Origin: Octopus sinensis
Taxonomy: Eukaryota
Assembly (NCBI RefSeq): GCF_006345805.1
Contig: NC_043007.1
Coordinates: forward strand, 25,482,001 to 25,546,000
DNA: 64,000 bases
Direction: 5' to 3'
The notes under the pieces are model-generated. The model was not told the DNA's origin. It did no database searches and saw only the letters and a program-made list of their open reading frames with translations. Shown here in pieces: positions 2,213-59,474 of the stretch (positions are counted from its first letter, which is position 1; every line of letters begins with the position of its first letter). Made by a program: the position numbers and the translations under genes.

Positions 2213-2497
2213 CACCATGAAGGCACCATTCAAGCGTGATTGTTACCAGTATCACCTTACTGGCACCTGTGCCGGTGGCATGTGTAAAAGGACTCGAGCG
2301 AGGTCATTGTCAATACCGGTGGCATGTAAAAGCACCCACTACACTCCCGGAGTGGTTGGCGTTAGGAAGGACATCCAGCTGTAGAAACTCTGCCAGATCA
2401 AGATTGGAGCCTGGTGCAGCCATCTGATTTGCCAGCCCTCAATCAAATCGTCCAACCCATGCTAGCATAGAAAGCGGATGTTAAACGATGATGATGA
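2213..2497 (+). mobile_element. Family C element (headless, hairpin array, (GAT)n tail)
   Basis: GGCACC/GTGCCGGTGGCATG units, GGTTGGCGTTAGGAAGGACATCC, tail GCGGATGTTAAACGATGATGATG. Confidence 0.85.
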
Positions 2498-2770
2498 AGT
2501 GGGTTCCACAAGACTAATTTGGATGCTACCTGTTCAGCTGTCTTTACCTGATTTTCTCACTAACTTTCAACAGGTTTCCATAAAGGCTAGAAATATCTCT
2601 TAGAAGAAAGAAAGAAAAATAAAAGATATACAATGGATAATGCAGTTCTAGATATACTTGGTCTGAAAAATAAGAGAAAAACAGGATGATCATTGCAAGA
2701 ATGTCTTTGGTCATTGGCATGCTTGTTTGTTGAGGGCCAGCCATGGAGCTAAGCAACAACAAGTATATGG

Positions 2771-2883
2771 AAGTGCTTTGTAAATATCTTCTCTACAGAC
2801 AGTAAATGACTAAATACTTTAGCTGCATGTGAAATTATGCAGCTGCTGCATGTGCATGTTGAATTATTCATCTGCTGTGCATG
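2771..2883 (+). promoter_or_regulatory. Candidate splicing-regulatory element (TGCATG x4) after a possible 3-nt exon
   Basis: TGCATG at 2824, 2847, 2853 and 2878 in non-microsatellite sequence; TCTTCTCTACAG|ACA|GTAAAT at 2787-2807. Confidence 0.3.
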
Positions 2884-3084
2884 TGCAGTGCAACACATGC
2901 AGCGATTCCCACAAATTAACGAGGAAGGGATATGTTTAAATAAGATCCATCTTTTAATACAATCAGAATGTTGGCTGGTTTGTTTGTTGGTTCGTTGGAA
3001 CGGCTAAATTAATTGATGAAATTTTCAAACATTGAGTTGGAAATTGATAAATAACAAAAATTATTGTGCTCAGGCATAATCAAA

Positions 3085-3121
3085 CTGTGTGTGTGTGTGT
3101 GTGAGCGGGGGAGAGAGAGAG

Positions 3122-3185
<64 letters not shown>
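3085..3185. repeat. (TG)n/(GA)n microsatellite
   Basis: Direct reading. Confidence 0.95.
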
Positions 3186-3587
3186 CACATTCTGAAGGTA
3201 TGCATGGTTAAATGCACAACTGGAAAGCCCAATGATGTTACATTAAGCTACTCATATGTCCTAATGGTTTTGCAGGTCAAATTTACTGGAGAGAGTGGAG
3301 ATTGTAGAAACGTTGTTCTTCGTTAATGAGAGGGAGAGAGGGAGAGAGGGAGAGAAAATAGTGGAAGCTGTGTTCTCAGAATCTTCAGAAGCTGTCATCA
3401 GGATGAAAGCACATAAAGAGCAATTGACTTTATCTGATGCTCGCATTTGGAATGATAGCCGTTCTGTAGAATAATTGGTAATGCAGTGTTCTTTTAAGTT
3501 CTAGACACATGGCTTGAGTACTAGGGTCTGTTTGTCTTCGTTTTCTCAAATTGGTGCTTCTATAATTCAAATATGATTTCATATCTT

Positions 3588-3810
3588 TTATCTTTTACTT
3601 GTTTCTGTCACTGGTCTGCAACCATACCGGGGTACTGCCTTGAAGGGTTCCGTCAAACAAATCCACCCATGTACTTAGTTTTTTAAGTCTGGTACTTATC
3701 CTCTCAGTCTCTCTTGCTAAGTTACTAATTTACAAGGACATAAACAAACCAACATCAGTTGTCATGTGATGGGGAAACGAATGCAACACACATACATACA
3801 CATGTCTGTG
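3588..3810 (-). mobile_element. SINE-A 3' half, diverged
   Basis: TCTTTTACTTGTTTC tail and body homology. Confidence 0.7.
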
Positions 3811-4050
3811 TGTATTTGTGTGTGTGTGTGTTTTAATCAAAGTGTACAGTATTATATATCCATTATGGTTGATCTTACCAGTCAGTTTTGCACTGGATTT
3901 TAAACTGGTTGGTAAGATTGGTTAGATGTTAGATAGCAGCATTGTTGCGTAGTACCACATGCTCATCAGAGCTGGCAGATATGGAAAAGACAAAACAAGA
4001 AACTGCTACCTCTGATGAGCATTCTTAAACAACTCTTTTTCTTTTTTTTT

Positions 4051-4464
4051 ATTCTTTTACTTGTTTCAGTCATGTGACTGTGGCCATGCTGGAGCACCGC
4101 CTTTAGTCGATCGAATCGACCCCAGGACTTATTCTTTGTAAGCCTAGTACTTATTTTATCGGTCTCTTTTTGCCGAACCGCTAAGTTATGGGGGACGTAA
4201 ACACACCAGCATCGGTTGTCAAGTGATGTTGGGGGTACAAACACAGACACACAAACACGCACATACACATATATATATATATATACATATATATATACAT
4301 ATATACGACGAGCTTCTTTCAGTTTCCGTCTACCAAATCCACTCACAAGGCTTTGGTCGGCCCGAGGCTATAGTAGAAGACACTTACCCAAGGTGCCACG
4401 CAGTGGGACTGAACCCGGAACCAAGTGGTTCGTAAGCAAGCTACTTACCACACAGCCACTCCTG
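4051..4464 (-). mobile_element. SINE-A, full length
   Basis: tRNA-like head GCAGGAGTGGCTGTGTGG (A box) ... GGTTCAGTCC (B box), internal (TA)/(TG) microsatellite, tail AAACAAGTAAAAGA; about 20 copies or fragments in the window. Confidence 0.95.
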
Positions 4465-5000
4465 CAACCAGAGAAGGGCCACTTTTTTGATTGGCATTAA
4501 ATAACTATCTGACATGTTCCAACCTCTGAACCATAAGTGTGTTGTCTCCTCTTTGTCATTTAATAATAACCTCTGTTTCTTGGTGGACAGTGATCCACTC
4601 ATTGCTTCCCTTCTTCTCATCACCCTTTTTGCATTCCACCCCCAAACACCACCATACCTATGCCCCAGAACTTTGATTCTCTGGGATCACATCACTACTC
4701 ATGTCTTTTTCCTGCAGGTGTAATGACCTGCTATAGTTTAAATGGAGCATTGATGGTATGAATCTCACTTTTCTCCCCTGTTCTCGACTCCGGACTGTCT
4801 TTTCTGCTTCTCTCTGTTTCCTCAGCCCTGCTTCCTGTTGGATTTTACTGCACTGAGTTGTACCTTTGTACCTTCTGTACCTTTGCTTTTTTTTCTGGGA
4901 TGGGCTGTTTGCCCTAAGCAAATCCATTTTAACATCTGGAAGGTGGTCCATATAAGCTTGGCCTCTAAACTTTGACCTATCCAGCATGGGAGGCCCTACC

Positions 5001-5197
5001 AGGCCCCCATGCTTGAACCCAACCTAGGCCCCCATATCTACAGCATTCACTGCTGGAATAAGGAGTGGTTAGCGATCACGTGGTCGTTAGCGTCAAATCG
5101 CCAGGCCCGGTCGGCGTTTGTGAGAGATGCAGCATTGAGGATGAATGAAGCCAGCTCAACCCACCCCGTGTGAATGCTGTAAGAAGAAGAAGAAGGC
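5001..5197 (+). mobile_element. 5'-truncated RTE-type LINE (family 2) with TSD
   Basis: Frame from 5003: APMLEPNLGPHIYSIHCWNKEWLAITWSLASNRQARSAFVRDAALRMNEASSTHPV*, then (GAA)n tail; 12-bp direct repeat GGAGGCCCTACC at 4989-5000 and 5198-5209. Confidence 0.75.
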
Positions 5198-6021
5198 GGA
5201 GGCCCTACCCGGATCTTGTGTTCTGCTGGCATAGCTCTATGGGTCAGTAGGGCATACAAGCCACAACAATGCAACAAAAACTGGACCTCATGGTGGAAAA
5301 AAAGTTATCACAACTTTTCTTCATTTGTTACTTGGAGGATCTTACAAATTAAGAAACCCTGAGTAGCATTGAAGAGAATCATCAATTTTGAACAAACAGA
5401 TAAACACTGTTACATGTATTTGTTACTCTTTCTCCTGGTTGTAAATCTGTCTATCTCTATGTGTGGATATGTGTGTATATCTCTCTGTCAGTCTGTCTCT
5501 CTCTTGCACACTTGTATGTATGAATGTATGAGGGTAAATGTGTATGTACATATATCATCATCATCATCATATGCATATGTATTTATAGGTGTGTGTGTAT
5601 TTTAATAAATGGTTATCATGACTTTTCTACCATGTAATTGCTTCGTTTTCAACAAACAATCTCCAATCAAGTCACTTGTGAAACTAGTACAACACTCCAA
5701 AATTGGTTTTTAAATGTTTTGTGCGAACATCACCTAATATAAAATATATTTCATTTTATTGCTAATAATGTGTTGTTACGATGAAATTAGTCTATTCTCT
5801 TCACTACGTCCTTCAGAAAGTAATTATTTTGCCACAGCTAACTTCATTGGTCACTTGCCATGTTTTAACAGCAGCAAGCATAACAGTTTTACTTCAATCT
5901 GCGAAATGAAAATTCTGGTTAAACACACACACATAAACATACACTTAACTCAAGAGAATTTCTCTTTCTCTTGTGCAGAAGGAAGGATGTGAGTCTAGTG
6001 TGTGTGTGTGTGTTTGTGTGT

Positions 6022-6320
6022 ATACTCTTTTACTTGATTCAGTCATTTGACTGTGTGGTCATGCTGGAGCACCGCCTTTAGTCGAGGAAATCGACCCCAG
6101 GACTTATTCTTTGTAAGCCTTGTACTTATTCTATCGGTCTCTTTTTGCCGAACTGCTAAGTTACGGGGACATAAACACACCAGCATCGGTTGTCAAGTGA
6201 TGTTGGGGGGAACAAACACAGACACACAAACACACACACATATATATATACATATACATATATATATGACGGGCTTCTTTCAGTTTCCGTCTACCAAATC
6301 CATTCACAAGGCTTTTATCA
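6022..6320 (-). mobile_element. SINE-A lacking head
   Basis: Tail and body match; ends within the post-head region. Confidence 0.9.
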
Positions 6321-6487
6321 ACTTCAGAAAGATGAGAAAAAACACAGCTAATCAGGGTAGGATATGACATCAGTACATAAACGGATGTAACTAAATACAA
6401 GATATTTCATCTAATGGCCCACTCACAAGTCTCATCTGAACTAAGTAAACTTGTAGAAAAGTAAGTGCTAAAATGATGATGATTATG

Positions 6488-6917
6488 AAGCGCTGGGTTA
6501 AGAAACTTGTGTCACAACCATGTGGTTTTGGGTTCATTCCCACTGCATAGCACCTTGGGCAAGTGTCTTCTACTAAAGCTCTGAGCCACCCAGAGCGCTG
6601 TGAGTGGATTTAGTAGATGGGGACAGAAAGCTGCTCATCATGTGTTTGTGTATATGATAGGTGTGTAAGTGTTTGTGTATATCCGTGTCTGGATATCACA
6701 GTGATGGTTGTAAATGAGCATCATTGTCATTCAAGTGAAGTTGTTTGTTTCTAGTCATCCATGAAAAACATGTCTAGCTATTGAAAAATAGTTCCTTTAC
6801 TTGGAAACCAGTGGAGGTTGGTGACAGGAAGGGTATCCAACTATAGAAAATCTGACTCAACAAATTCTGTCTGACCCATGCCAGCATGGAAAACTGGATG
6901 ATAAATGATGATGATGG
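6488..6917 (+). mobile_element. SINE with A-type head and G-type tail
   Basis: A-like head (GGGTTCATTCCCACTGCATAGCACCTTGGGCAAG) then a different body ending GGAAGGGTATCC...CCCATGCCAGCATGGAAAA...(GAT)n. Confidence 0.75.
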
Positions 6918-6937
6918 TGATATATATATATATAACT

Positions 6938-7277
6938 GAGACTCCCTTCGGTCACGACACTGACCATGGGATTGCACCTAGAAAGTTACCGTCCTAGACA
7001 CAAGTCCGGGTAAGGTTGTTTATGGAAGACCAGCCTTCACCCATGCATACTGGCCTCCCCTCTCCACGCCACCGATGTTATCCAAGGGAATGGCAAAGGG
7101 GCCGATACAGCTTGGCACCCGTGACGTCGCAACTCATTTCTACAGCTGAGTGAACTGGAGCAACGTGAAATAAAGTGTCTTGCTCAAGAGCACAACATGC
7201 AGCCCAGTCCAGGATTCGAGCTCACAACCTGACAATCGTAAGCTCGATGCTCTAACCACTGAGCCATGCGCCTTCAC
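6938..7277 (-). mobile_element. SINE D head + tail 2
   Basis: Minus strand head GTGAAGGCGCATGGCTCAGTGGTTAG...GCTCGAATCC, core CTTGAGCAAGACACTTTATTTCACGTTGCTCCAG; second copy at 50764-51080; flanked by (TA)n. Confidence 0.9.
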
Positions 7278-7289
7278 TATATATATATA

Positions 7290-7578
7290 TGATGGGCTCT
7301 CCCATCGAAGATGATGTATGAGTCTTCAGCTTTTTTACCGAACGACCTGCACAAATAATTTGCTTATTGTGTTGTACATTAGCTCACTCTCACCCCATCA
7401 AATCGACATTGTCTGAACAGTGTTCCACACATCAGGTTGAAGTGACCACACATACACACATGTGAGATGCAGTGTTTTGCTTAAGAGCACCACACACCAC
7501 CTGGTCTAGCAATTGATTGAGACCACAATCTCATGATTGTGAGTACAGCACGCTAAACCACCAGGCAATGCCTCCTCA
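7290..7578 (-). mobile_element. SINE D head + a different tail (tail 4), diverged
   Basis: Minus strand GTGAGGAGGCATTGCCTGGTGGTTTAG head, CTCTTAAGCAAAACAC core; 3' part unrelated to tails 1-3. Confidence 0.55.
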
Positions 7579-7579
7579 C

Positions 7580-7627
<48 letters not shown>

Positions 7628-7659
7628 ATATACTTTATTTAAAGCAGCAGAAAATTCAA

Positions 7660-7709
7660 CAAAATCTGTTACTCTGAGTTTCTCGTTGCCGTTCATCAGA
7701 TAGTTTTTG
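7660..7709 (-). ncRNA. Minimal type I hammerhead motif, inverted copy
   Basis: Mirror image of 7714-7763; one stem I change (CTAT instead of CTGT). Confidence 0.7.
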
Positions 7710-7713
7710 CTAG

Positions 7714-7763
7714 CAAAAACTGTCTGATGAACGGCAACGAGAAACTCAGAGTAACAGATTTTG
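7714..7763 (+). ncRNA. Minimal type I hammerhead ribozyme motif
   Basis: Stem I 5' CAAAAACTGT; core CTGATGA 7724-7730; stem II A-CG-GCAA-CG-A; GAAA 7741-7744; palindromic stem III ACTC-A-GAGT; GUA cleavage triplet 7751-7753; stem I 3' ACAGATTTTG. Confidence 0.8.
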
Positions 7764-7860
7764 TTGAATTTTCTGCTGCTTTAAATAAAGCATATTACTC
7801 TACCACTGGTATTTGAGTACTCTTTTTTTCCACCTTGTTTCACATTTATGTGTTTACTCT

Positions 7861-7902
<42 letters not shown>

Positions 7903-8108
7903 ATATATATATATGTGTGTATGTGTATGTGTGTGTCTTCAATATTTCATCTATTCAATAAAACAATCAATACTTCATTTCATTTTACTATATATATATT
8001 ATTTATACTATATATTCTATAATCTACATTAATATTATAAAGAATATAAATAAAACATAAAAAACAGAAAGAGTTGGAATTCCTTTGAATAATATATATA
8101 TATATAAT

Positions 8109-8145
<37 letters not shown>

Positions 8146-8151
8146 GTGTAT

Positions 8152-8456
8152 ATCAAAATCAAATCAAGATCGAAATCAAAATGGAAATAGTAGGTGTGGC
8201 CGATACCAGTGCCGCCTGACTGGCACCAATGCTGATGGTACATAAAAGTGCCCCCTGACTGGATTCCATGCTGGTAGCACATAAAGAGCATCCACTACAC
8301 TCTTGGAGTGGTTGGCATTAGGAAGTGCACCCAGCTGTAGAAACCATGCCAGATCAGACTGGAGCTTGGTGCAGCCTTGTGGCTTGCCAGTCCCCATTCA
8401 AACCATCAAACCTATACCAGCATGGAAAACGGACATTAAACGATGATGATGATGAT
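8152..8456 (+). mobile_element. Family C element
   Basis: Starts ATCAAAATCAAATCAAGATCGAAATCAAAATGGAAAT, ends GGACATTAAACGATGATGATG. Confidence 0.85.
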
Positions 8457-8484
8457 ATCTATATATATATTATATTATATTAAC

Positions 8485-8880
8485 ACTAGCAGTATCGCCC
8501 GGCGTTGCTCGGGTTTGTAAGGGAAATAACTATATAAGCATTTTTAGAGATGTAAAGTATAATAGCCATCTCAATATGGCTAACCACAAAGGGGGGGTGT
8601 AACTGTAGCTTTTTACGTTCTGAGATTTAATAATAAATTTTTAGAGAGTTACTTCCCTTATATATGCCAAAAATGCATTAAAAATGGGAAAAATTGATGG
8701 TAAATTTTTTATAAAATTGTAGACTCATCGTAGACGCGCACTACCCAGAAAGGCTCGATATGAATCACGACTATAAGTTACCCAGTTTTGGTTTAAACTG
8801 CCCCGCAAAATGTGGGAGTAGTTAGGAATCTAAATTGTAGGAGACAGACAGCACACAACCTCACTTTTATATATAAAGAT
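8485..8880 (+). mobile_element. Helentron-associated (HINE/DINE-like) element
   Basis: 5' ACTAGCAGTATCGCCCGGCGTTGCTCGGG and 3' CACTTTTATATATAAAGAT, the end structure recalled for DINE-1-like elements. Confidence 0.7.
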
Positions 8881-9020
8881 TTATCTTGGACAAAACTAAC
8901 TGTGACAGATTTTCTAAGGCTTTGATGCCTTTCCTGTTGCCTGTTTCCAGGTAAGGTCATATATCTTCTAGCCCTTTGAATAATGAACAGCTTCAAGGCC
9001 AGGTATATTTCCATGTTAGT

Positions 9021-9180
9021 TTGTAAACAATGACAGTTCGCACATAGATGGTGACCTTGTTTTCTCATGGTGTGCAAACAACATGCAGTTCAATAGCCGG
9101 GTGTCTTTTCATCACAGATTGTAAACAACAACAATATTTACCTGAACGGTGACCTTGTTTTTACTCAGTGTGCAAACAAT
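9021..9180 (+). promoter_or_regulatory. Duplicated motif cassette, candidate enhancer
   Basis: GTAAACAA (9023, 9121), TGACCTTG (9052, 9150), GCAAACAA (9074, 9172): identical spacing, diverged linkers. Confidence 0.35.
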
Positions 9181-9220
9181 GTCAAGACCGTGGGAAAACA
9201 CTCCTACACACATGCATATT

Positions 9221-9780
9221 GCGCAGGAGCAGCTGTGTGGTAAGTAACTTGCTTACCAACCACGTGGTTCCGGGTTCAGTCCCACAGCATGGCACCTTGG
9301 GCAAGTGTCTTCTACTATAGCCTCAGGCCGACCAAAGCCTTGTGAGTGGATTTGGTAGGCAGAAACTTAAAGGAGCCCGTCGTATATATGTATATATATA
9401 TATATGTATATCTGTATGTATATATATACACACACACACACACACATATATATGTAAAGAAATAATTGAGATTCAGTTGAACTAGGTACTTAAGTTGAAG
9501 CACCAAATCAGTGTGGTGAATAAAATTGAAATCAAAATCCTGTTGCTTATTTTGTTTATATATGTATGTATATGTTTGTGTGCCTATGTTTGTCCTCCCC
9601 CAACCACCATCACTTGACAACCGTTGCTGGTGTGTTTACGTCCCCATAACTTAGCTGTTCGGCAAAAAGTGACTGATAGAATAAGTACTAGGCTGACAAA
9701 GAATATGTCTTGGGGGTCGATTTGTTCGACTAAAGGCCGTGCTCAGTCAAATAAGTGAAGCAAATAAAAGAGTAAAAGAG
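9221..9780 (+). mobile_element. SINE-A with a nested fragment in its microsatellite
   Basis: Full head and tail; 9455-9560 is homologous to 37083-37238. Confidence 0.9.
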
Positions 9781-14084: not shown

Positions 14085-14112
14085 TCATCATCATCATTCT
14101 TTCATTTCTTCT

Positions 14113-14156
<44 letters not shown>

Positions 14157-14222
14157 TCCTTCTTTCCTTCTTTCTTTCTTTCCTTCCTTCCTTCCTTCCT
14201 TCCTTCCTTCCTTCCTTCCTTC

Positions 14223-14265
<43 letters not shown>

Positions 14266-14331
14266 TCCTTCTTTCCTTCTTTCTTTCCTTTTCTTTTCTT
14301 TCTTTCCTTCTTTCCTTTTCTTTCTTCTTCC

Positions 14332-26410: not shown

Positions 26411-27279
26411 CAAAAGAGGCTGAAATAAACATTATTTTACGTCTTACTGTTAAATTTTGTTTCGTTTTTGCAAAATATAAATTTATTTTATGGTTTATTA
26501 TTGCTTATATTTTGAATTAAATTTTTATATGGGAACACCAAAATCTTCTGAGTGCTTTAGGGCCTCTATGGGTCTGAAGCGAGCCCCTGCTTAGATCAAT
26601 GAAAATAAGTAAGCACCAGTTTTGTAAGTCCTGGGCTTGCTACAATTGGCTGTGTCATTAAAAAAGGTGGTATCCCAGCAAGACCAAAGACCTGTGACTG
26701 AAACCACTTAGAAGTTTCTCTCTTGGCTGTCAGCTCTCTCTGTCTTGTAGTGTCTCTGTACTCCTACATGCCTTAGGATCCCCAGAACCTAATCTACTCT
26801 GACTTCTTGCCATTTACACATGCTTTACTTATTAAGCTAAGCTTTTTTGTCAACAAAAAAAGCTGGGGGCTGGTGCGAGCTAAGAACATCCATGTCAATC
26901 TGTGTTATTTTCTTCAACCTTCAGGCAATGCCCCACCACCACCACCGCCATCACCTTCCTTATGTTTTTTTCTTCTTTGTTTTACTTTTCCTTTGAAAAG
27001 TTGTTTTTATTTCTTTGTACGCCCCCCCCCCTTTCTTGTCTTTGCTTATCTCCCTTCCTGCCTTTTTTTCTTTCTTTTGTGTCTTTCTTATTTCTTCTTT
27101 TCTTCCCTCCTCCCCTCCCCCTCTCTCTCTCCTTGTTATCCTTCCAACTCTCTCTCTGGTTGCTGTCAAAAGCATTAAGTGTCTGTCCATTTCCCTCTTT
27201 GTCTCAGAGCTGTTTCCGTATTGTTGTTATTGTTGCCTTATTAACCAGTAATGCTACCCCCACCCCATCATTGGTATTC

Positions 27280-27351
27280 TCTACTACTACCTCCACCACC
27301 ACCACCACCACTACTACTACTACTCTTACTACTACTACTATCACCACCACC

Positions 27352-27386
<35 letters not shown>

Positions 27387-27444
27387 CACCTCCACCACCA
27401 CCACCACCACCACTACTACTACTACCTCCACCACCACCACTGCC

Positions 27445-27477
<33 letters not shown>

Positions 27478-27580
27478 CTCTTACTACTACTACTACTACT
27501 ACTACTACTCTTACTACTACTACTACTACTACTACTTCTGCTGTTGCTACCGCCAACTCCACCACCACCACTACTGGTGC
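27280..27580. repeat. (ACC/ACT)n compound microsatellite
   Basis: Direct reading; source of the long poly-T/P/L ORFs. Confidence 0.95.
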
Positions 27581-27819
27581 TGCTGTTGCTGTCTTACTAA
27601 GGATTTCCCACTGACTGACTGGTTGTCAAGGGGTGATGGTGATGTTGGAGGTGGGTGGTGGGGGTTATCATTCATGGTTTCCTTTGTTCATCTAACAAAG
27701 CAGCTCTTACCTATTATATTACCCCCACCCCACCTTCCTTACATGCCTTCCACCCAACCTTTCTTTTTTTTCTTAACCTTTACCTTGGTAATTTTATTTA
27801 CTTATGTATATCTTTTAGC

Positions 27820-28040
27820 TTTTATTTTATTTGTCTTGTCATTTGACTGTGGCCATTCTGGGGCACTGCCTTGAAGGGTTTTAGTCAAAGAAATCGACCC
27901 CAGGGCTTTTTTTTTTAATCCTGATACTTTTTCTATTGGTCTCTTTTTGCTGAACCGCTAAGTTACTGGGACCGTAAATGCACCAACATTGGTTGTCAGG
28001 CAATGGTGGGGGACAAACACAAACAGATACATACATACAT

Positions 28041-30755: not shown

Positions 30756-31904
30756 TATGATTATAGAGAGAGAAGGGAGAGAAATAAAGAGAGAGAATGA
30801 GAGAGATTACAATTTGTTAAACACAGCTGGCATAAACACTTTTCCTTTCTTCATTTAAAGAGAAATGTGCTTACATACATAAAGAGAGAGAGAGAATGAG
30901 GGAGACAGTAAAATATCCGATGTCAAATAAGCCAATGCCAAATCAGTGGTGCCAAAATGGCTGCGCCAAAATGTCTCATCTACTCCTCTAGGAGTCTCCA
31001 TAAAAGATGGTTCTCTTTAAAATTTAAAATGCCAAATAGCTGCTGCTGTGAAAGAAGGATTCTGACCTTTTGGGGATTGAAGTTTCATGTCTGAAAGAGT
31101 GAAACTAAACCCTCTCCACTTATTTCTCATCCATCTTTCACAGATGAAGGACCAGTCCCAAAATGCCAAAATTTTCTTTGCTCTGCAACCCCCCCCACAC
31201 ACCAGTTTGACAACTTCCTGCTGATACAGACCACCATTAGTTTTCTCACTTTTTAAAAATTTCCAGCCATGACCTTCACATTTTATTTTTCAGACATTGT
31301 ATAACTAAGACTACATTATCTAATATATCCACTTTGTTTTAGATGGATTGCTAATAATTCAAAGGAGATTTAGTTGCTATTTCTAGTAGGTTAAGCAACC
31401 ACATAGAGGCTCCCTTGTGTGGTTTATTTCTATAATGTTTGCCCGGGAGGTAATAATACTAAGAACCCTGAGTGTGCCATTGAGGAAAAGTTAGAGCACA
31501 ACATGTTTGCTTGACCTGCTAGAAATAACAGTCAAATCTTCCTCAAATTGCATCGTGTCGGTTTGGGTAAAGTAATTGTTTAAGGTACACAAAGACTGCA
31601 GGTATGCGGGTATTTTGAAAATATCTCATGGAGTTATGATCATGCCCTGCATAATTATGGGCTGCCCTTTTGGCAGGGCATAGCACCCATTCAGTCACTC
31701 TGCCAGGAATATGGCAAAGTCTTGGGACTGCGGCATGGTGGGTTGTGAAGAGGTAGCAGAAGAGCTCAGCTGAGCCAACAGTGATTCTTACATTGATACT
31801 GAGTGGAGGAATCCTAGAAAATAACTCAATGGTCAAGGTCACCAATCTCTATGAGACGATTAACTGTAACACATCCATTGAGGTGGTGTCTATGGTTGTG
31901 TAAT

Positions 31905-32389
31905 GATATGTATAAGATCTGGTCATCAAATCTAAGTAGAGATTTCAAACTTAAAATCTTCAAAGCCACAGTCGAACCAATTCTACTATATGGCTCAGAA
32001 ACCTGGACGTTATCAAAGAAGCTTGAGAGGCGGTTGGATGGAACCTACACTCGCCTCCATATGAGAGCTCAAAATCTCTCGTGGAAGCGTCATCCAACCA
32101 AAGTACAAATATATGGGAAACTACCACCTGTATCATCTCTTGTGAAAGGTAGAAGAGTCCAGTTTGCTGGACATTGTTGTAGAGCTGAAAACGAGGTTAT
32201 TTCTACTCTTCTCCTCTGGAAGCCATCTGCTCACGATACCAGAGGGCACACACTCTCCTACCCTGATGTAATCTCCAGGGATACAGGCATCCAGCAACAG
32301 GACCGACATAATGCTATGATGGACTGTGAAGTCTGGTGTAACATAGTAAATTCCATTGTCTCGACCACGGTCGAACAATGATGATGATG
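31905..32389 (+). mobile_element. 5'-truncated RTE-type LINE (family 1) with TSD
   Basis: KIFKATVEPILLYGSETWTL...RRVQFAGHC...DTG...MMDCEVW; stop codon is the first unit of the (TGA)n tail; terminal hairpin TCGAC-CACG-GTCGA; 13-bp TSD ATGGTTGTGTAAT at 31892-31904 and 32390-32402. Confidence 0.9.
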
Positions 32390-33373: not shown

Positions 33374-34582
33374 ATATATACTCTGTGTTTGGAAAGCGGC
33401 GAGCTGGCAGACACATTAGCACACCGAGTGAAATGCTTAGTGGTATTTCGTCTGTCGTTACGTTCTGAGTTCAAATTCTGCCGAGGTCAACTTTGCCTTT
33501 CATCCTTTCAGGGTCGATAAATTAAGTACCAGTTTCGCACTGGGGTCGATATAATCGACTCAGTCCCTTCGTCTGTCCTTGTTTGTCCCCTCTATGTTTA
33601 GCCCCTTGTGGGGAGTAAAGAAATATATACTCTGTGTCTGGAAGGCGGCGAGCTGGCACACATTAGCACGCCGGGCTGGCGAAATGCTTAGTGGTATTTC
33701 GTCTGTCGTTACGTTCTGAGTTCAAATTCTGCCGAGGTCAACTTTGCCTTTCATCCTTTCGGGGGTCGATAAATAAAGTACCAGTTTTGCACTGGGGTCG
33801 ATATAATCGACTCAGTCCCTTCGTCTGTCCTTGTTTGTCCCCTCTGTGTTTAGCCCCTTGTGGGTAATAAAGAAATAGGTATTTCGTCTGTCGTTACGTT
33901 CTGAGTTCAAATTCCGCCGAGGTCAACTTTGCCTTTCATCCTTTCGGGGTCGATAATTAAAGTACCAGTTTCGCACTGGGGTCGATATAATCGACTCAGT
34001 CCCTTCGTCTGTCCTTGTTTGTCCCCTCTATGTTTAGCCCCTTGTGGGCAGTAAAGAAATATATACTCTGTGTCTGGAAGGCGGCGAGCTGGCAGATACA
34101 TTAGCACGCCGGGCGAAATGCTTAGCGGTATTTCGTCTGTCTGTTGTTATGTTCTGAGTTCAAATTCCGCCGAGGTCAACTTTGCCTTTCATCCTTTCGG
34201 GGTCGATAATTAAAGTACCAGTTTCGCACTGGGGTCGATATAATCGACTCAGTCCCTTCGTCTGTCCTTGTTGTCCCCTCTATGTTTAGCCCCTTGTGGG
34301 CAGTAAAGAAATATATACTCTGTGTCTGGAAGGCGGCGAGCTGGCAGATACATTAGCACGCCGGGCGAAATGCTTAGCGGTATTTCGTCTGTCTGTTGTT
34401 ATGTTCTGAGTTCAAATTCCGCCGAGGTCAACTTTGCCTTTCATCCTTTCGGGGTCGATAATTAAAGTACCAGTTTCGCACTGGGGTCGATATAATCGAC
34501 TCAGTCCCTTCGTCTGTCCTTGTTTGTCCCCTCTATGTTTAGCCCCTTGTGGGCAGTAAAGAAATATATACTCTGTGTCTGG
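33374..34582 (+). repeat. Tandem array of SINE-B-long plus flank
   Basis: ATATATACTCTGTGT(C/T)TGG at 33374, 33623, 34059, 34311, 34564 separating SINE copies. Confidence 0.95.
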
Positions 34583-34734: not shown

Positions 34735-35410
34735 GTTGTTTCTGTCATTAGACTAAGGCCATGCTGGGGCACTGCCTTGAATTTTTAGTTGAATGAATTG
34801 ACCCCCAGTACTTATTTTTTTTTTTTTAAGCCAGTTACTGATGTTATCTGTGGAGGTGCATGGCTTAGTGGTTAGGGTGTCAGCATCATGATCGTAAGAT
34901 TGTGGTTTCGATTCCTGGACCGGGCGACGCGTTGTGTTCTTGAGCAAAACACTCCATTTCACGTTGCTCCTGTCCACTCAGCTGGCAGAAATGAGTAATG
35001 CTGCGATGGACTGGCGTCTCGACCAGCTGGGGAACACATACGCCATTGAAACCTGGACACTGGGCCCATGAGCCTGGCTAGGCTTTAAAAGGGCGCATAA
35101 AATAAAAAAAACTGATGTTATCAGACTCTTTTGCCAAACCATTAAGTCATGGAAATGTAAACACACCAACACCGGTTGTCAGGCAGTGGTGGAGACAAAC
35201 ACGGACACAAGACACACACACACACACACACACACACGCAAACATGTATGTATATGATGATCTTCTTTCAGTTTCCGTCTACCAAATCCACTCACAAGGC
35301 TTTGGTCAGCCTGAGGCTATAGCAGAAGACACCTGCCCAAGGTGCCACACAGTGGGACTGAACCTGAAACTATGTGGTTTGGAAGCAAGCTTCTTACCAC
35401 ATAGCCATAT
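34735..35410 (-). mobile_element. SINE-A interrupted by a D-family SINE
   Basis: Tail at 34735-34848, remainder 35111-35410. Confidence 0.85.
34849..35110 (+). mobile_element. SINE D head + tail 3 (A-rich tail), with TSD
   Basis: 12-bp TSD ACTGATGTTATC at 34837-34848 and 35111-35122; degenerate relative at 52785-53010. Confidence 0.9.
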
Positions 35411-39180: not shown

Positions 39181-39710
39181 GTGGTGAGCTGGCAGAATTG
39201 TTAGTACACCAAGCAAAATGCTTAGTGACATTTTGTACTTCTTTATGTTCTGAGTTCAAATTCTGACACGATCAACTTTGCCTTTGATCAAGGCGGCGAG
39301 CTGACAGAAACGTTAGCATGCCGGGTGAAATGCTTAGCGGTATTTCGTCTGCCGCTACGTTCTGAGTTCAAATTCCGCCGAGGTCGACTTTGCCTTTCAT
39401 CCTTTCGGGGTCGATTAAATAAGTACCAGTTATGCACTGGGGTCGATATAATCGACTTAATCCATTTGTCTGTCCTTGTTTGTCCTCTTTGTGTTTAGCC
39501 CATTGTGGGTAGTAAAGAAATAGGTATTTTGTCTGCTGTTACATTCTGAGTTCAAATTCTGCCGAGGTCAACTTTGCTTTTCATCCTTTCAGGGTCGATA
39601 AATTAAGTACCAGTTACGCACTGGGTTCGATGTAATCGACTTAATCCCTTTGTCTGTCCTTGGTTGTCCCCTCTATGTTTAGCCCCTTGTGGGTAGTAAA
39701 GAAATAGGTA
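39181..39710 (+). mobile_element. Old B fragment + SINE-B-long + headless B copy
   Basis: Full copy 39290-39524, restart at GGTATTT (39523), second tail ending 39710. Confidence 0.9.
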
Positions 39711-39719
39711 AGTGTATCA

Positions 39720-41321
39720 CTGCTAGTCAATGAGACTGCCATCTTTTGGATGTGTGTTGATCACGTCTCAATGTGTATGTCGACAGCCTTGTCCCAGGTG
39801 TGTGAGGCAGAGGTTTTGGTGTGCTGGTGAGTGTACCATTGTCAGTTTGTTTGCACGTGTGTCTTGCATGTCTGAGTGGGTGTGTATCAGTAATGCTATC
39901 CCAGATTTATAAGTCAGTAATTGTCGAGGTGAAATAGGGCTTAGCCCTCAATCAATCAGTGCATCTTTTGTTCGTGTCTGTTAGTTTTCTTTCGGTTATC
40001 TTAGCCAGTGGGTGTAGTCTATTAGTGAGTGTACCAATGTCAGTTAGTTTGGATACGTGCATGTGTCAGTAACACAGTGTCAGATTTATCACTCAGTGGT
40101 TGTCCAGGTGAAGTAGTGGTTATCCTTCTATTTCTTTACTACCCACAAGGGGCTAAACACAGAGGGGACAAACATGGACAGACAAACAGATTAAGTCGAT
40201 TATATCGACCCCAGTGCGTAACTGGTATTTATTCACTCGATCCCAAAAGGATGAAAGGCAAAGTCGACCTCGGCGGAATTTGAACTCAGAACTTAAAAAC
40301 AGATGAAATACCGCTAAGCATTTCGCCCGGCGTGTTAACATTTCTGCAATCTCGCCACCTTAAAGTAGTGGTTATCCTTCGACCAATCAGATCTTTTGTA
40401 TGTGTCTGTTAGCAGCACTGTCTCAGTTATTTGAGCCAGCGTATATTAGTGTATTTGGTAAATGTATCAATTTCAGTTAATTTGGATGTGTGCATGTATC
40501 GGTAACACAATTTCAGATTTATCAGTCTGTGGTTGTCCAGGTGAAGTATTGGTTATCCTTCGACCAATCAGATCTTTTGTATGTGTCTGTTAGCAACACT
40601 GTCTCATTTATCTGAGCCAGTGTATATTGGTATATTTATTGAATGTATCAATTTTAGTTAATTTGGATGTGTGCATGATCGGTAACACAATTTCAGATTA
40701 TCAGTCTGTGGTTGTCCAGGTGAAGTATTGGTTATCCTTCGACCAATCAGATCTTTTGTATGTGTCTGTTAGCAACACTGTCTCATTTATCTGAGCCAGT
40801 GTATATTGGTATATTTATTGAATGTATCAATTTTAGTTAATTTGGATGTGTGCATGTATCGGTAACACAATTTCAGATTTATCAGTCTGTGGTTGTCCAG
40901 GTGAAATAATGGTTATCCTTCAACCAATCGGATCTTTCGTATGTGTCTATTAGTAATACCGTCTCAGTTATGTAAGCTGGCAGGTGTAGTGTATCTGTAA
41001 GTGTGTCAGTTTGGAAATGTGTTTGTGTGTATCAGTAGATCTGTGATTTAGTGCTTGTTGAAGTGAAGTATCGGCTAGAGCATTTTCCCCTCTGTCTGTA
41101 TCAACAGCATTTGTTCCAGATAATGTGAGTCATTATTGGTTGTGTGTAGTATATTGGTGAGTGTATCACTGCCTGGTAGTGTGCACGGCCTTCAGTGGAT
41201 GTTGTTCTAGGTCATCTGAATGGATATTGATAATGCTGTCCCAGATATGTAGGCCAGTGGTTGTAGGTAGTTGCGATTACCCCTCAGTCAGCCAGAGCAT
41301 CTTTTGGATGTGTGTCTAGGA

Positions 41322-48891: not shown

Positions 48892-48955
<64 letters not shown>
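48672..48955 (+). mobile_element. SINE-B-short with long (ATT)n tail
   Basis: Tail TCAGGCCTCATGCCTATAGTAGAAAGG(ATT)n. Confidence 0.9.
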
Positions 48956-58439: not shown

Positions 58440-59474
58440 TTTCCGCAAAGGCTGATGTCGCCTTTCATTCTTTTGGGGTTGATGAAATAAGCACCGGTTA
58501 AGTATGAGAGAGGTGGCGGGGGGCTTGCAGAGAGTGATGTAATCGGTTACTCCCTTCCCAGAAATAGCTGGCCTTGTGTCAAAATTTGAAACCGTTATTA
58601 ACGAAGATGGTGAGCTGGTGGAATCGTTAGCATGCCGGACAAAATGCTCACTGCTATTTCGTCTGTCTTTACATTCTGAGTTCAAATTCTGCTGAGGTTG
58701 ACTTTGCCTTTCATCCTTTCGGGGTCGACAAAATAAGTGCCAGTTTAACACTGGGGTGTTATGTAATCAACTTAACCCCTCCCGCAAATCGCTAGCCTTA
58801 TGATAAAATTTGAAACTGTTATTAATAAAAACTGTGAGCTGGCAGAATCGTTAGCACACCGGGATAATTGCTTAGCAGCATTTCATCTGACTTTATGTTC
58901 TGAGTTCAAATCCCTCCAGGGTCGACTTTCTTTCTTCCTTTTGGAGTTGATAAAATAAGTACCAGTTGTGTACTGGTGCCAGTGTAATAGACTATCCCTC
59001 TCCCCCAAATTTCAGGCCTTGTGCCTATAGTAGAAAAAGATTATTATTATTATTATAAGGTGGAGCACTGACAGAATTGTTTGCATACTTGGTAAAATGC
59101 TTAGTGGCATTTCATCTATCTGCACGTTCTGAGTTCAAATTCCGCCGAGGTTGACTTTGTGTTTCGTCCTTTCAGAGTCGATAAATTAAGTACCAGTTGA
59201 GTACTGGGGGGGTCAATGAAATTGATTAGTCCCTTCCCCAAAATTTCAGGCCTTGTGCTTTTAGTAGAAACGATTATTGTTACTATCATTATTATTATCC
59301 TTTTGTCCTCTCAGGGTTGATAAATTGAGTACCAGTGAAATTCTGGGGTCAACGTAATCGACTAGTCTCCTCCTCCAACACTTCAGGCCTTGTGCCTATA
59401 ACAGAAAGGATTATTATTATTATTATTATTATCATCATCATTATTATCATTATTATCATTAATATTATATATTA

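What the first reader, a model, noticed from the sequence alone, without database searches (positions are those of the whole stretch)
7633..7790. Head-to-head pair of minimal hammerhead ribozymes in a 158-bp palindrome
Seen: a near-perfect palindrome centred at 7711/7712 and set in (TA)n. Each arm reads stem I - CUGAUGA - short stem II with GCAA tetraloop - GAAA - ACUC(A)GAGU - GUA site - stem I (9 of 10 pairs on the + copy). Known: minimal type I hammerheads with a palindromic, sterically unclosable stem III occur in Penelope-like pLTRs and newt satellite 2, and cleave as dimers. Inference: a non-autonomous Penelope-like remnant that places one ribozyme on each strand. Any read-through RNA carries a ribozyme plus its antisense, so it can fold as a 79-bp dsRNA (ADAR or Dicer substrate) or as a ribozyme needing a partner in trans. 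The closing stem II pair is A-A, which may lower activity.
Basis: partly seen in the sequence, partly recalled or inferred. Interest (0 to 1): 0.85.

Follow-up and report, generated by a model that had tools for sequence, protein, structure and literature searches.

The report
Palindromic retroelement stub with hammerhead motifs
A 229-bp insertion in a TA microsatellite holds two head-to-head copies of a short sequence with a hammerhead-ribozyme-like motif; it is most likely a dead, truncated Penelope-like retrotransposon insertion, a known kind of genomic fossil whose ribozyme probably does not work here.

Summary
Arms 7633-7711 and 7712-7790 form a zero-spacer palindrome with 78 of 79 positions complementary. 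Each arm carries a full type I hammerhead core: CUGAUGA, GAAA, A15.1-U16.1 and a GUA cleavage site. A motif this complete is expected about 2e-6 times per window by chance.

Helix II is atypical. It has 2 bp plus a GCAA loop and an A-A pair where G10.1-C11.1 is normally conserved. No Rfam hammerhead model matches, although those models also score a canonical-core relative (L001) only weakly.

The insert is wider than reported. It spans 7633-7861, including a one-sided 71-nt tail, and is bracketed by matching G(TA)15T(TA)8 and G(TA)14T(TA)11 tracts that look like a 48-bp target-site duplication.

This layout is the published signature of Penelope-like element (PLE) integration: two 5'-truncated copies head to head, 3' ends pointing outward, a tail on one side only, an AT-rich target and a long duplication. 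I found the same layout in a genuine Poseidon_Ac insertion in Anolis (L004).

No PLE ORF lies in the window, and no second copy could be retrieved, so membership is unproven. Read-through RNA folds into a 79-bp hairpin (-128.7 kcal/mol) that hides the ribozyme. Verdict: a probable dead PLE-type stub, of modest interest.

The parts
7585..7632 (.). Left copy of the putative target-site duplication: G(TA)15 T (TA)8
   Evidence: It is 96% identical to 7862-7909 and has the same single-T interruption. Only these two of the 27 (TA)n>=8 tracts in the window have this structure.
7633..7711 (-). Inverted 5'-truncated copy without a tail; its 3' end points left into the (TA)n
   Evidence: It is identical to the reverse complement of 7712-7790 except A7701 against G7722.
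7658..7711 (-). Hammerhead-like motif on the - strand: stem I 7711-7700 and 7669-7658, CUGAUGA 7699-7693, helix II 7692-7683, GAAA 7682-7679, helix III 7678-7672, U7671, A7670 (predicted cut between 7670 and 7669)
   Evidence: One search gives an exact 32-nt match at 7699-7668 on the - strand. Stem I has an extra C-A mismatch at 7701, and the copy fails the descriptor.
7712..7790 (+). Direct 5'-truncated copy (right arm)
7712..7765 (+). Hammerhead-like motif on the + strand: stem I 7712-7723 and 7754-7765 (11 of 12 pairs), CUGAUGA 7724-7730, helix II A-CG-GCAA-CG-A 7731-7740, GAAA 7741-7744, helix III CUCAGAG 7745-7751, U7752, A7753 (predicted cut after 7753)
   Evidence: It is the only descriptor hit in the window.
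7791..7861 (+). One-sided 71-nt 3' extension ('tail') of the right copy; it lies inside the TSD and is absent from the left copy
   Evidence: It has no significant fold (z = -1.05) and no other copy in the window. The analogue is the one-sided 36-nt tail of Poseidon_Ac in L004.
7862..7913 (.). Right copy of the putative target-site duplication: G(TA)14 T (TA)11

Best explanation
Window 7633-7861 is a single 229-bp retroelement insertion into a (TA)n microsatellite. It was most likely made by the reverse transcriptase and GIY-YIG endonuclease of a Penelope-like element (PLE).

Proposed mechanism (inferred):
1. The enzyme cut both strands of the AT-rich target about 48 nt apart. This later gave the G(TA)~15T(TA)~8 duplication.
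2. It primed reverse transcription from both nicks on RNA carrying the element's hammerhead region.
3. On one strand, synthesis began at an internal start site (the equivalent of 7790). On the other it began 71 nt further downstream (7861), which gives a tail on one side only.
4. Both cDNAs stopped or were joined at the base of hammerhead stem I (7711/7712). The product is two head-to-head 79-bp copies.

The result is a dead-on-arrival stub with no ORF and no promoter-bearing pLTR.

Each strand carries a minimal type I hammerhead-like motif inherited from the source element. Its catalytic core is complete. Its helix III is weak and self-complementary, the kind that works as a double hammerhead. 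Its helix II is degenerate: 2 bp, with A-A in place of G10.1-C11.1.

At this locus the ribozyme is very probably silent. Any RNA crossing the palindrome has the perfect antisense transcribed first and zips into a 79-bp hairpin.

Shown: the anatomy, the motif, the TSD-like flanks, and the fold energies. Inferred: the PLE machinery, the twin priming, and the inactivity.
For: - Palindrome with zero spacer and 78/79 complementary positions.
- Complete hammerhead core, cleavage triplet and 11/12 stem I. It is the only descriptor hit in the window, with about 1.7e-6 expected per window at this quality.
- The same core, helix III and proximal stem I (ACUGU-CUGAUGA...GAAACUCAGAGUAACA) occur with a canonical 4-bp helix II (GUGC-AUAA-GCAC, giving G10.1-C11.1) in the eukaryote-like metagenome contig L001. 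There the motif sits about 95-118 nt upstream of a microsatellite. The same pattern has 0 hits in 596 Gb of prokaryotic genomes and 0 in IMG/VR.
- The flanks G(TA)15T(TA)8 and G(TA)14T(TA)11 match each other and no other tract in the window.
- Published PLE traits:
  - Heavy 5' truncation, an inverted 5'-truncated copy adjoining head to head, a tail at one end only, (TA)n or AT-rich targets, and a variable-length TSD (PMC8557442).
  - The Poseidon_Ac (PAc) protein cleaves and extends both DNA strands and starts reverse transcription at two internal sites downstream of the hammerhead (PMC11167929).
- Positive control in Anolis locus L004. An inverted copy ends at ORF+82 with no tail. The opposite-end copy ends at ORF+118 with a 36-nt tail. 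There is a head-to-head junction at 1900/1903, and the unit is bracketed by the direct repeat GTTACAAAG.
- Two 3' ends lie 37 and 108 nt after the predicted cut here, against 53 and 89 nt in PAc.
- PLE min-HHRs typically carry an extra nucleotide after A9, a palindromic helix III and a type I topology (PMC4209133). All three are present here.
Against: - No RT or GIY-YIG coding remnant anywhere in the 64 kb.
- No second copy in the window. No homologue of the 29-codon ORF that opens at the AUG of CUGAUGA.
- The parent family could not be retrieved. The PAc protein search listed reptile, insect and unnamed metagenome PLEs but none named as mollusc.
- The G10.1-C11.1 pair and the 6-8 bp helix II reported for PLE min-HHRs are absent. 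Stem I (12 positions) is longer than the 4-5 bp typical of them.
- No Rfam hammerhead hit. The hammerhead domain and the tail are no more stable than shuffled sequence (z about -1).
- The tail is 71 nt, against 30-40 nt in described PLEs.
- Identical truncation points in both copies (zero spacer) are not what two independent primings predict. L004 has a 562-bp spacer between its arms.
- TSDs inside microsatellites are inherently ambiguous.
- The source organism is unverified.
Confidence: 0.55

Rival explanations
1. A hammerhead-bearing retroelement fragment (7712-7861) inserted once into the (TA)n. It could be a retrozyme-like, SINE-like or PLE-derived fragment. The left arm was added later, or during repair, by a DNA-level fold-back or template-switch inverted duplication that used TA-type microhomology. 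It would not come from twin priming by a PLE enzyme.
For: - Both arms stop at exactly the same nucleotide (zero spacer). A snap-back or template switch predicts this; two independent primings do not.
- The palindrome continues for 4-5 nt of ATAT microhomology beyond the mismatch at 7632/7791.
- (TA)n is self-complementary and prone to secondary structure.
- The hammerhead evidence and the TSD evidence fit this model equally well.
Against: - It needs two events where the PLE model needs one.
- The tail-less outer end of the left arm is just what PLE units show at one end (PMC8557442).
- The metazoan retrozyme hallmark, head-to-tail tandem repeats, is absent.
Confidence: 0.2
2. A palindromic MITE or foldback-type DNA transposon (7633-7790) inserted at a TA dinucleotide. 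The hammerhead-like motif is a coincidence, and 7791-7861 is ordinary target DNA.
For: - Near-perfect 158-bp palindromes are typical of some MITEs.
- The left flank is TA.
- At sub-threshold level the hairpin resembles MITE-derived plant miRNA precursor models such as MIR1120/1122.
- (TA)n tracts are very common here: 27 with n>=8 in 64 kb.
- No PLE ORF lies nearby.
Against: - The right flank is CA, not TA.
- It leaves unexplained the matched interrupted (TA)n tracts that bracket the palindrome plus the 71 nt.
- The full hammerhead core, correctly placed inside a 12-position stem, is expected about 0.03 times per Gb.
- There is no second copy in the window.
Confidence: 0.1
3. The palindrome is a functional hairpin-RNA gene, a source of endo-siRNA or miRNA-like RNAs or an ADAR substrate. 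It would be maintained for its dsRNA, and the hammerhead motif would be incidental.
For: - A 79-bp perfect hairpin at -128.7 kcal/mol.
- Generic sub-threshold matches to many miRNA precursor models.
- Only 1 mismatch in 79 between the arms.
Against: - All miRNA hits are below gathering score and hit unrelated families on both strands, as any long hairpin would.
- No conservation or expression data are available.
- Near-identity of the arms is explained equally well by a young insertion.
Confidence: 0.05
4. An assembly or sequencing artefact, such as a chimeric fold-back read.
For: PLE-type tandem and inverted structures are noted to cause assembly problems (PMC8557442).
Against: - The palindrome is short and has distinct unique flanks on both sides.
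- It has an internal mismatch and an asymmetric tail.
- Fold-back read artefacts normally run to the end of the read.
Confidence: 0.03

Closest known systems
Minimal type I hammerheads of metazoan Penelope-like elements (Cervera & de la Pena 2014, PMC4209133; Lunse et al. 2017, not readable here)
   Same: - Type I topology with no loop-loop tertiary contacts.
- Weak, self-complementary helix III that implies dimeric action.
- An extra nucleotide after A9.
- Occurrence as dispersed, truncated copies.
- Dual motifs on opposite strands close together were reported in Schistosoma.
   Different: - Helix II is 2 bp plus a GCAA loop instead of 6-8 bp.
- A-A replaces the conserved G10.1-C11.1 pair. 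Alternatively it reads as C-G with a bulged A on each side.
- Stem I is long (11/12) instead of 4-5 bp.
- The two motifs are fused with no spacer.
Poseidon_Ac (PAc) complex insertions in Anolis carolinensis (Frangieh et al. 2024, PMC11167929; locus L004 examined here)
   Same: - Head-to-head inverted 5'-truncated copies with 3' ends outward.
- A tail at one end only.
- Two alternative 3' ends tens of nt downstream of the hammerhead cut site.
- An AT-rich target and flanking direct repeats.
- An AUG at or within the hammerhead core.
   Different: - PAc units contain the RT-EN ORF and pLTRs; this stub has neither.
- The tail is 36 nt there and 71 nt here.
- The TSD is about 9 bp there and about 48 bp here.
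- The inverted arms in L004 are separated by a 562-bp spacer; here by none.
- There is no sequence similarity.
ASBVd(-) hammerhead and the 'double hammerhead' of Forster et al. 1988
   Same: - Identical GAAACUCAGAGU helix III segment.
- A helix III too weak for efficient monomeric cleavage, with activity through a dimer. This point is established knowledge; see the reviews PMC6765202 and PMC7761336.
   Different: - ASBVd is a viroid RNA with a type III topology.
- Its H17 is C.
- It has no DNA stage.
- The resemblance is convergent.
Metazoan non-LTR retrozymes and newt satellite 2 (tandem hammerhead repeats that yield circRNAs)
   Same: A type I hammerhead in a short non-coding unit of about 150-300 nt, possibly mobilised by PLE enzymes (bioRxiv 10.64898/2026.07.22.740005).
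   Different: - Those are head-to-tail tandem arrays, so that cleavage at two sites releases a unit.
- Here the copies are head to head, and a transcript contains only one sense ribozyme.
L1 'twin priming' inversions (own knowledge; not checked here)
   Same: Two cDNAs primed from both strands of one target give inverted 5'-truncated segments within one TSD.
   Different: - L1 inversions join different parts of the element rather than the same 3' segment twice.
- A different enzyme family is involved.

Membership tests
Hammerhead ribozyme (type I, minimal) | Conserved core C3-U4-G5-A6-N7-G8-A9 and G12-A13-A14 | tested here: met
   CUGAUGA at 7724-7730 and GAA at 7741-7743 on the + strand, with an exact mirror copy on the - strand.
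Hammerhead ribozyme (type I, minimal) | A15.1-U16.1 pair followed by H17 (any base but G) at the cleavage site | tested here: met
   A7744, U7752 and A7753 form a GUA triplet.
Hammerhead ribozyme (type I, minimal) | Helix II closed by the highly conserved G10.1-C11.1 pair | tested here: not met
   A7731 and A7740 flank a 2-bp CG/CG stem with a GCAA loop. The relative L001 does have G10.1-C11.1.
Hammerhead ribozyme (type I, minimal) | Helix I formed by the 5' and 3' flanks (open-ended stem I) | tested here: met
   7712-7723 pairs with 7754-7765 at 11 of 12 positions on the + copy. The - copy has a further C-A mismatch at the second pair.
Hammerhead ribozyme (type I, minimal) | Match to a curated covariance model (Rfam Hammerhead_1, _3, _II, HH9, HH10) | tested here: not met
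   No hit at gathering score, nor at E<=10 on 321 nt or 70 nt. Caveat: the canonical-core min-HHR in L001 scores only 17.4 bits against a cut-off of 48.5, so these models barely see minimal variants.
Hammerhead ribozyme (type I, minimal) | Covariation that supports the helices across copies | tested here: inconclusive
   Only one relative was found (L001). Its helix II differs completely yet still pairs, but the search pattern fixed the conserved parts.
Hammerhead ribozyme (type I, minimal) | Site-specific self-cleavage | not testable with these tools
   It needs in vitro transcription of monomer and dimer constructs. The predicted cut is after 7753.
Penelope-like element (PLE) insertion | Single ORF with a telomerase-like RT and a GIY-YIG endonuclease | tested here: not met
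   tblastn with Poseidon_Ac finds nothing better than E = 1.1. A motif regex on the six-frame translation is empty. Such an ORF is not expected in a 5'-truncated stub, but no link to one is shown.
Penelope-like element (PLE) insertion | Inverted 5'-truncated copy adjoining head to head, 3' ends outward | tested here: met
   Arms 7633-7711 (-) and 7712-7790 (+). Described in PMC8557442 and seen in L004.
Penelope-like element (PLE) insertion | Optional 3' 'tail' present at only one end of the unit | tested here: met
   7791-7861 extends only the right copy and lies inside the TSD. Its length is 71 nt, against the 30-40 nt described and the 36 nt seen in L004.
Penelope-like element (PLE) insertion | AT-rich or (TA)n target with a variable-length TSD | tested here: met
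   The insert lies in (TA)n. The matched tracts G(TA)15T(TA)8 and G(TA)14T(TA)11 bracket it. Caveat: a TSD inside a microsatellite is ambiguous.
Penelope-like element (PLE) insertion | Direct pseudo-LTRs or a partial tandem arrangement | tested here: not met
   The element has no direct repeat in the window apart from the (TA)n flanks.
Penelope-like element (PLE) insertion | Sequence continuity with full-length PLE copies in the same genome | not testable with these tools
   The source genome is not searchable here. The attempts gave no conspecific copies.
Metazoan non-LTR retrozyme or satellite with hammerheads | Head-to-tail tandem repeats, each with a hammerhead | tested here: not met
   There are only two copies, in inverted orientation.
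MITE (Tc1/mariner-type) | Terminal inverted repeats flanked by a TA/TA duplication, in many copies | tested here: not met
   The left flank is TA and the right flank is CA. There is no second copy in the window. Genome-wide copy number is unknown.

The most novel reading that the evidence does not exclude
The zero-spacer fusion of a ribozyme with its own antisense is not a mere fossil but a working hairpin-RNA locus. Read-through transcripts would form a perfect 79-bp dsRNA. That dsRNA would be diced into siRNAs, or hyper-edited by ADAR, against the hammerhead/pLTR region of the parent retroelement family. The integration machinery would thus occasionally create its own silencing trigger. A related reading: a helix II as small as 2 bp with an A-A closing pair may still support protein-assisted cleavage, as reported for the PAc hammerhead, which would widen the accepted hammerhead consensus.
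Probability: 0.07. Interest if true: 0.6.

Novelty: new member of a known kind. Interest (0 to 1): 0.3.

Why it matters
If the reading is right, this locus is a compact 229-bp record of Penelope-like integration. It preserves both-strand priming, two alternative reverse-transcription start sites and a long staggered cut in a microsatellite. It may help annotate similar stubs that repeat libraries and Rfam models miss.

It also shows two practical points. Curated hammerhead models do not detect minimal PLE-type motifs. Small perfect palindromes in invertebrate genomes can be by-products of retroelement integration rather than MITEs or miRNA genes.

It does not open a new mechanism. Hammerheads in PLEs, their dimeric mode and their inverted insertion structures are all published.

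Tried and rejected
- **Rfam.** I ran it on the whole window, on 321 nt and on one arm. There was no hammerhead hit. The many sub-threshold miRNA-precursor hits are generic long-hairpin matches and I disregarded them.
- **Other copies in the window.** BLASTN of 7712-7861 against the window at word size 7 found none.
- **PLE coding remnants.** Regex and tblastn searches of the window found none.
- **Supplements of Craig et al. 2021.** None are held as text.
- **Full-text search for the motif strings.** The only relevant hit was ASBVd(-).
- **Pattern scans of sequence collections.** JGI metagenomes gave 1 hit (L001). IMG/VR gave 0 (two patterns). Prokaryotic genomes gave 0 and serve as a control. 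The flanks of L001 are not significantly similar to ours (p = 0.36 and 0.81). L001 is therefore a hammerhead relative or convergent example, not the same repeat family.
- **ORF at the AUG of CUGAUGA.** By analogy with PAc, I asked whether it is the N-terminus of a parent PLE ORF. It has no database homologue and no similarity to 120 PLE proteins. I dropped the idea.
- **Parent family.** The PAc protein search, meant to reach the parent family, gave named hits from reptiles, insects and other non-mollusc animals plus unnamed metagenome proteins.
- **Organism and conspecific DNA.** A LINE ORF search returned only unnamed ENA metagenome proteins. Two fetched contigs (L002, L003) share no repeats with the window. 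A paper search for a SINE string found nothing. The organism therefore stays unverified. The SINE-like repeats resemble, from my memory only, abundant octopus repeats.
- **Thermodynamic signal.** The tail and the hammerhead domain fold no better than shuffled sequence (z about -1). I make no claim of a structured RT-initiation hairpin.
- **tRNA genes.** ARAGORN finds none in the window.
- **Lunse et al. 2017.** The paper could not be read.
Full report
**Observation**

The sequence at 7633-7790 is a zero-spacer palindrome. The repeat finder gives arms 7628-7711 and 7712-7795, 84 nt, 98% complementary. The outer 5 nt are TA-type microhomology beyond a mismatch, so the real arms are 79 nt. They differ at one position, G7722 against A7701.

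- stem I 5' strand, 7712-7723
- CUGAUGA, 7724-7730
- A-CG-GCAA-CG-A, 7731-7740
- GAAA, 7741-7744
- CUC-A-GAG, 7745-7751
- U7752 and A7753
- stem I 3' strand, 7754-7765

Stem I has 11 of 12 pairs on the + copy. The - copy has an extra C-A mismatch next to the cleavage site.

**Is the motif more than chance?**

I wrote a deliberately relaxed descriptor for minimal type I hammerheads. It requires:
- the core boxes;
- at least 2 bp in helix II, with optional bulges;
- a self-complementary helix III;
- a UH cleavage site;
- at least 4 bp in stem I.

It finds only this site in the window. With the window's base composition it expects 0.005 hits per 64 kb, about 77 per Gb. At the quality seen here (helix III of at least 3 bp, stem I of at least 11/12) it expects about 1.7e-6 per window, about 0.03 per Gb. 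The descriptor was shaped after seeing the example, so the numbers are rough. Even so, a chance origin of the whole motif is unlikely.

Against a working hammerhead:
- No Rfam hammerhead model matches, even at E<=10 on a 70-nt arm.
- The hammerhead domain is no more stable than shuffled sequence (z = -1.09).
- The monomer's minimum-energy fold pairs UCUGA of the core with UCAGA of helix III.

The Rfam negative is weak evidence. A canonical-core minimal hammerhead in L001 reaches only 17.4 bits against a gathering score of 48.5.

**A relative**

I scanned JGI metagenome contigs for CTGATGA-N(8-12)-GAAACTCAGAGTAAC. There was one hit, L001. It reads ACUGU-CUGAUGA-GUGC-AUAA-GCAC-GAAA-CUCAGAG-UA-ACA.

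Beyond the bases the pattern imposed, L001 shares the five bases before the core. It also has a textbook 4-bp helix II with G10.1-C11.1. The same pattern has no hit in 596 Gb of prokaryotic genomes or in IMG/VR. In L001 the motif sits about 95-118 nt upstream of a (TTA)n(CA)n(TA)n junction.

The flanks of L001 are not significantly similar to ours. I therefore treat it as another hammerhead of the same design, not the same repeat family. The segment GAAACUCAGAGU is also the helix III of the ASBVd(-) hammerhead, the classic double-hammerhead case. This shows that helix III can close as 3 bp plus a CAG triloop, so 'sterically unclosable' overstates it.

**Surroundings: the unit is larger than reported**

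The palindrome is followed by 71 unpaired nt (7791-7861). The whole 229 bp is bracketed by G(TA)15T(TA)8 (7585-7632) and G(TA)14T(TA)11 (7862-7913). Of the 27 (TA)n>=8 tracts in the window, only these two share the leading G and the single-T interruption after 14-15 units. I read them as a target-site duplication of about 48 bp.

So the layout is: TSD, inverted 79-bp copy, direct 79-bp copy, 71-nt tail, TSD.

Upstream (about 7462-7571) lies a sequence with one weak repeat elsewhere in the window. From about 8200 downstream there is a multi-copy repeat. There is no other copy of the element in the window. There is also no RT or GIY-YIG coding remnant.

**What known biology predicts this layout**

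Craig et al. 2021 (PMC8557442) describe PLE insertions as:
- heavily 5'-truncated;
- often with an inverted 5'-truncated copy adjoining head to head;
- carrying a 30-40-bp tail, often at one end only;
- preferring (TA)n or other microsatellite targets;
- having variable-length TSDs.

Frangieh et al. 2024 (PMC11167929) studied the Poseidon_Ac (PAc) protein. They show that:
- it cleaves and extends both strands of an AT-rich target;
- it starts reverse transcription at two internal sites, and the tail is the segment between them;
- the hammerhead lies at the pLTR-ORF junction, with the cut 26 nt after the start codon;
- hammerhead cleavage needs the protein and is dispensable for insertion.

Cervera & de la Pena 2014 (PMC4209133) list the traits of PLE min-HHRs:
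- type I topology;
- a conserved G10.1-C11.1 pair;
- a long helix II;
- a palindromic helix III;
- low activity, and only as dimers.

They also note dual motifs on opposite strands 100-700 bp apart in Schistosoma.

**Positive control**

I fetched a genuine PAc locus from Anolis (L004) and mapped the published consensus onto it:
- The left end of the unit is an inverted copy that stops at ORF+82, with no tail.
- The right end is a direct copy that stops at ORF+118, with a 36-nt tail.
- A head-to-head junction lies at 1900/1903.
- The unit is bracketed by the direct repeat GTTACAAAG.

One caveat: about 7 kb in the middle of this unit (roughly 2434-9610) does not map to PAc. That the whole stretch is a single insertion unit rests on the flanking direct repeat.

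This is the same architecture as 7585-7913 in the window, at full size. The two 3' ends lie 53 and 89 nt after the hammerhead cut in PAc, and 37 and 108 nt after it here.

**Mechanism I consider most likely (confidence about 0.55)**

1. A PLE enzyme nicked both strands of a (TA)n tract about 48 nt apart.
2. It primed cDNA synthesis from both nicks on RNA containing the hammerhead region, using two different internal start sites.
3. The two short cDNAs were joined at the base of stem I.

The product is a dead-on-arrival stub.

The zero spacer is the weakest point. It suggests a snap-back or a template switch between the two cDNAs rather than two independent truncations. A purely DNA-level inverted duplication of a single inserted fragment is the main rival (0.2).

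A palindromic MITE with a coincidental hammerhead (0.1) fails on three counts: the CA right flank, the matched (TA)n tracts, and the improbability of the motif. A functional hairpin-RNA gene (0.05) and an assembly artefact (0.03) are not excluded.

**Function at this locus**

A transcript across the palindrome folds into a 79-bp hairpin: -128.7 kcal/mol for the + strand RNA and -124.4 for the - strand RNA. The antisense arm is transcribed first, so the ribozyme fold (-5.3 kcal/mol when imposed) cannot compete.

Only an RNA that starts at or after 7712 could form the ribozyme. Even then it would probably act only as a dimer: cofolding gives a double hammerhead with an 8-bp intermolecular helix III containing a central A-A, at -24.0 against 2 x -10.9 kcal/mol.

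With a 2-bp helix II and A-A in place of G10.1-C11.1, I expect little or no activity. This is inference, not a measurement. Both arms carry the same helix II, so the source RNA already had it.

**Membership and novelty**

The locus works like, and is built like, a PLE-derived min-HHR insertion. Membership is not established, for two reasons. The link to a PLE ORF could not be tested, because the source genome is not searchable with these tools. And one conserved hammerhead feature, G10.1-C11.1, is not met.

I could not verify the organism. From memory, the SINE-like repeats resemble abundant octopus repeats. Cephalopod genomes are reported to contain Penelope elements and Rfam Hammerhead_1 hits (PMC6962438).

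Hammerheads in PLEs, their dimeric mode, inverted PLE insertions and opposite-strand motif pairs are all published. I therefore rate this as a new member of a known kind, with interest 0.3.

Noticed in passing
L001:1364-1397 (- strand): The metagenome contig Ga0215180_1091083 carries a clean minimal type I hammerhead: CUGAUGA-GUGC-AUAA-GCAC-GAAA-CUCAGAG-UA. It lies about 95-118 nt upstream of a (TTA)n(CA)n(TA)n junction. Rfam scores it only 17.4 bits, so curated models miss this class.
   Followed up: partly
L004:348-12756: A genuine Poseidon_Ac complex insertion in Anolis. An inverted 5'-truncated copy ends at ORF+82. A direct copy ends at ORF+118. An internal head-to-head junction lies at 1900/1903, with a 562-bp spacer between the arms. 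The unit is flanked by the direct repeat GTTACAAAG. About 7 kb in the middle (roughly 2434-9610) does not map to PAc and was not examined.
   Followed up: partly
window 7727-7816: The AUG inside CUGAUGA opens a 29-codon ORF (MNGNEKLRVTDFVEFSAALNKAYYSTTGI) that runs through the end of the arm into the tail. This recalls PAc, whose ORF starts at the hammerhead. No homologue was found.
   Followed up: yes
window 33374-34582, 39339-39710, 59162-59436: Tandem or partly tandem arrays (periods of 137, 184, 252 and 436 nt) of a SINE-like unit containing GAGTTCAAATTCCGCCGAGGTCAAC. ARAGORN calls no tRNA genes in the window. From memory, the unit resembles abundant octopus repeats; this is unverified.
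   Followed up: no
window 31851-32381 (+): A 176-aa ORF that looks like the C-terminal part of a non-LTR (LINE) reverse transcriptase. It has 218 homologues, nearly all unnamed proteins from ENA metagenome assemblies at up to 89% identity. This suggests host DNA of related animals in those assemblies.
   Followed up: partly
window 40363-40971: A 181-bp unit repeated 3.4 times in tandem at 94% identity. Its nature is unknown.
   Followed up: no
window 26900-27900 (27281-27536): (CTA)n of about 86 units, flanked by long C/T-rich low-complexity sequence. This creates spurious poly-Thr, poly-Leu and poly-Pro ORFs.
   Followed up: no
window, whole: The window is very rich in microsatellites: 27 (TA)n tracts with n>=8 in 64 kb, plus (TTCT)56 at 14097-14326, (GA)38 at 3111-3185 and (ATT)n at 48892 and 59410. 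Being 'set in (TA)n' is therefore not remarkable on its own; the matched interruption pattern of the two flanking tracts is.
   Followed up: yes
window 7462-7571 and 8197-8400: The insertion lies between two other repeats. An upstream element has one 72%-identical copy at 34858-34962. A downstream family has at least 9 further copies in the window.
   Followed up: partly
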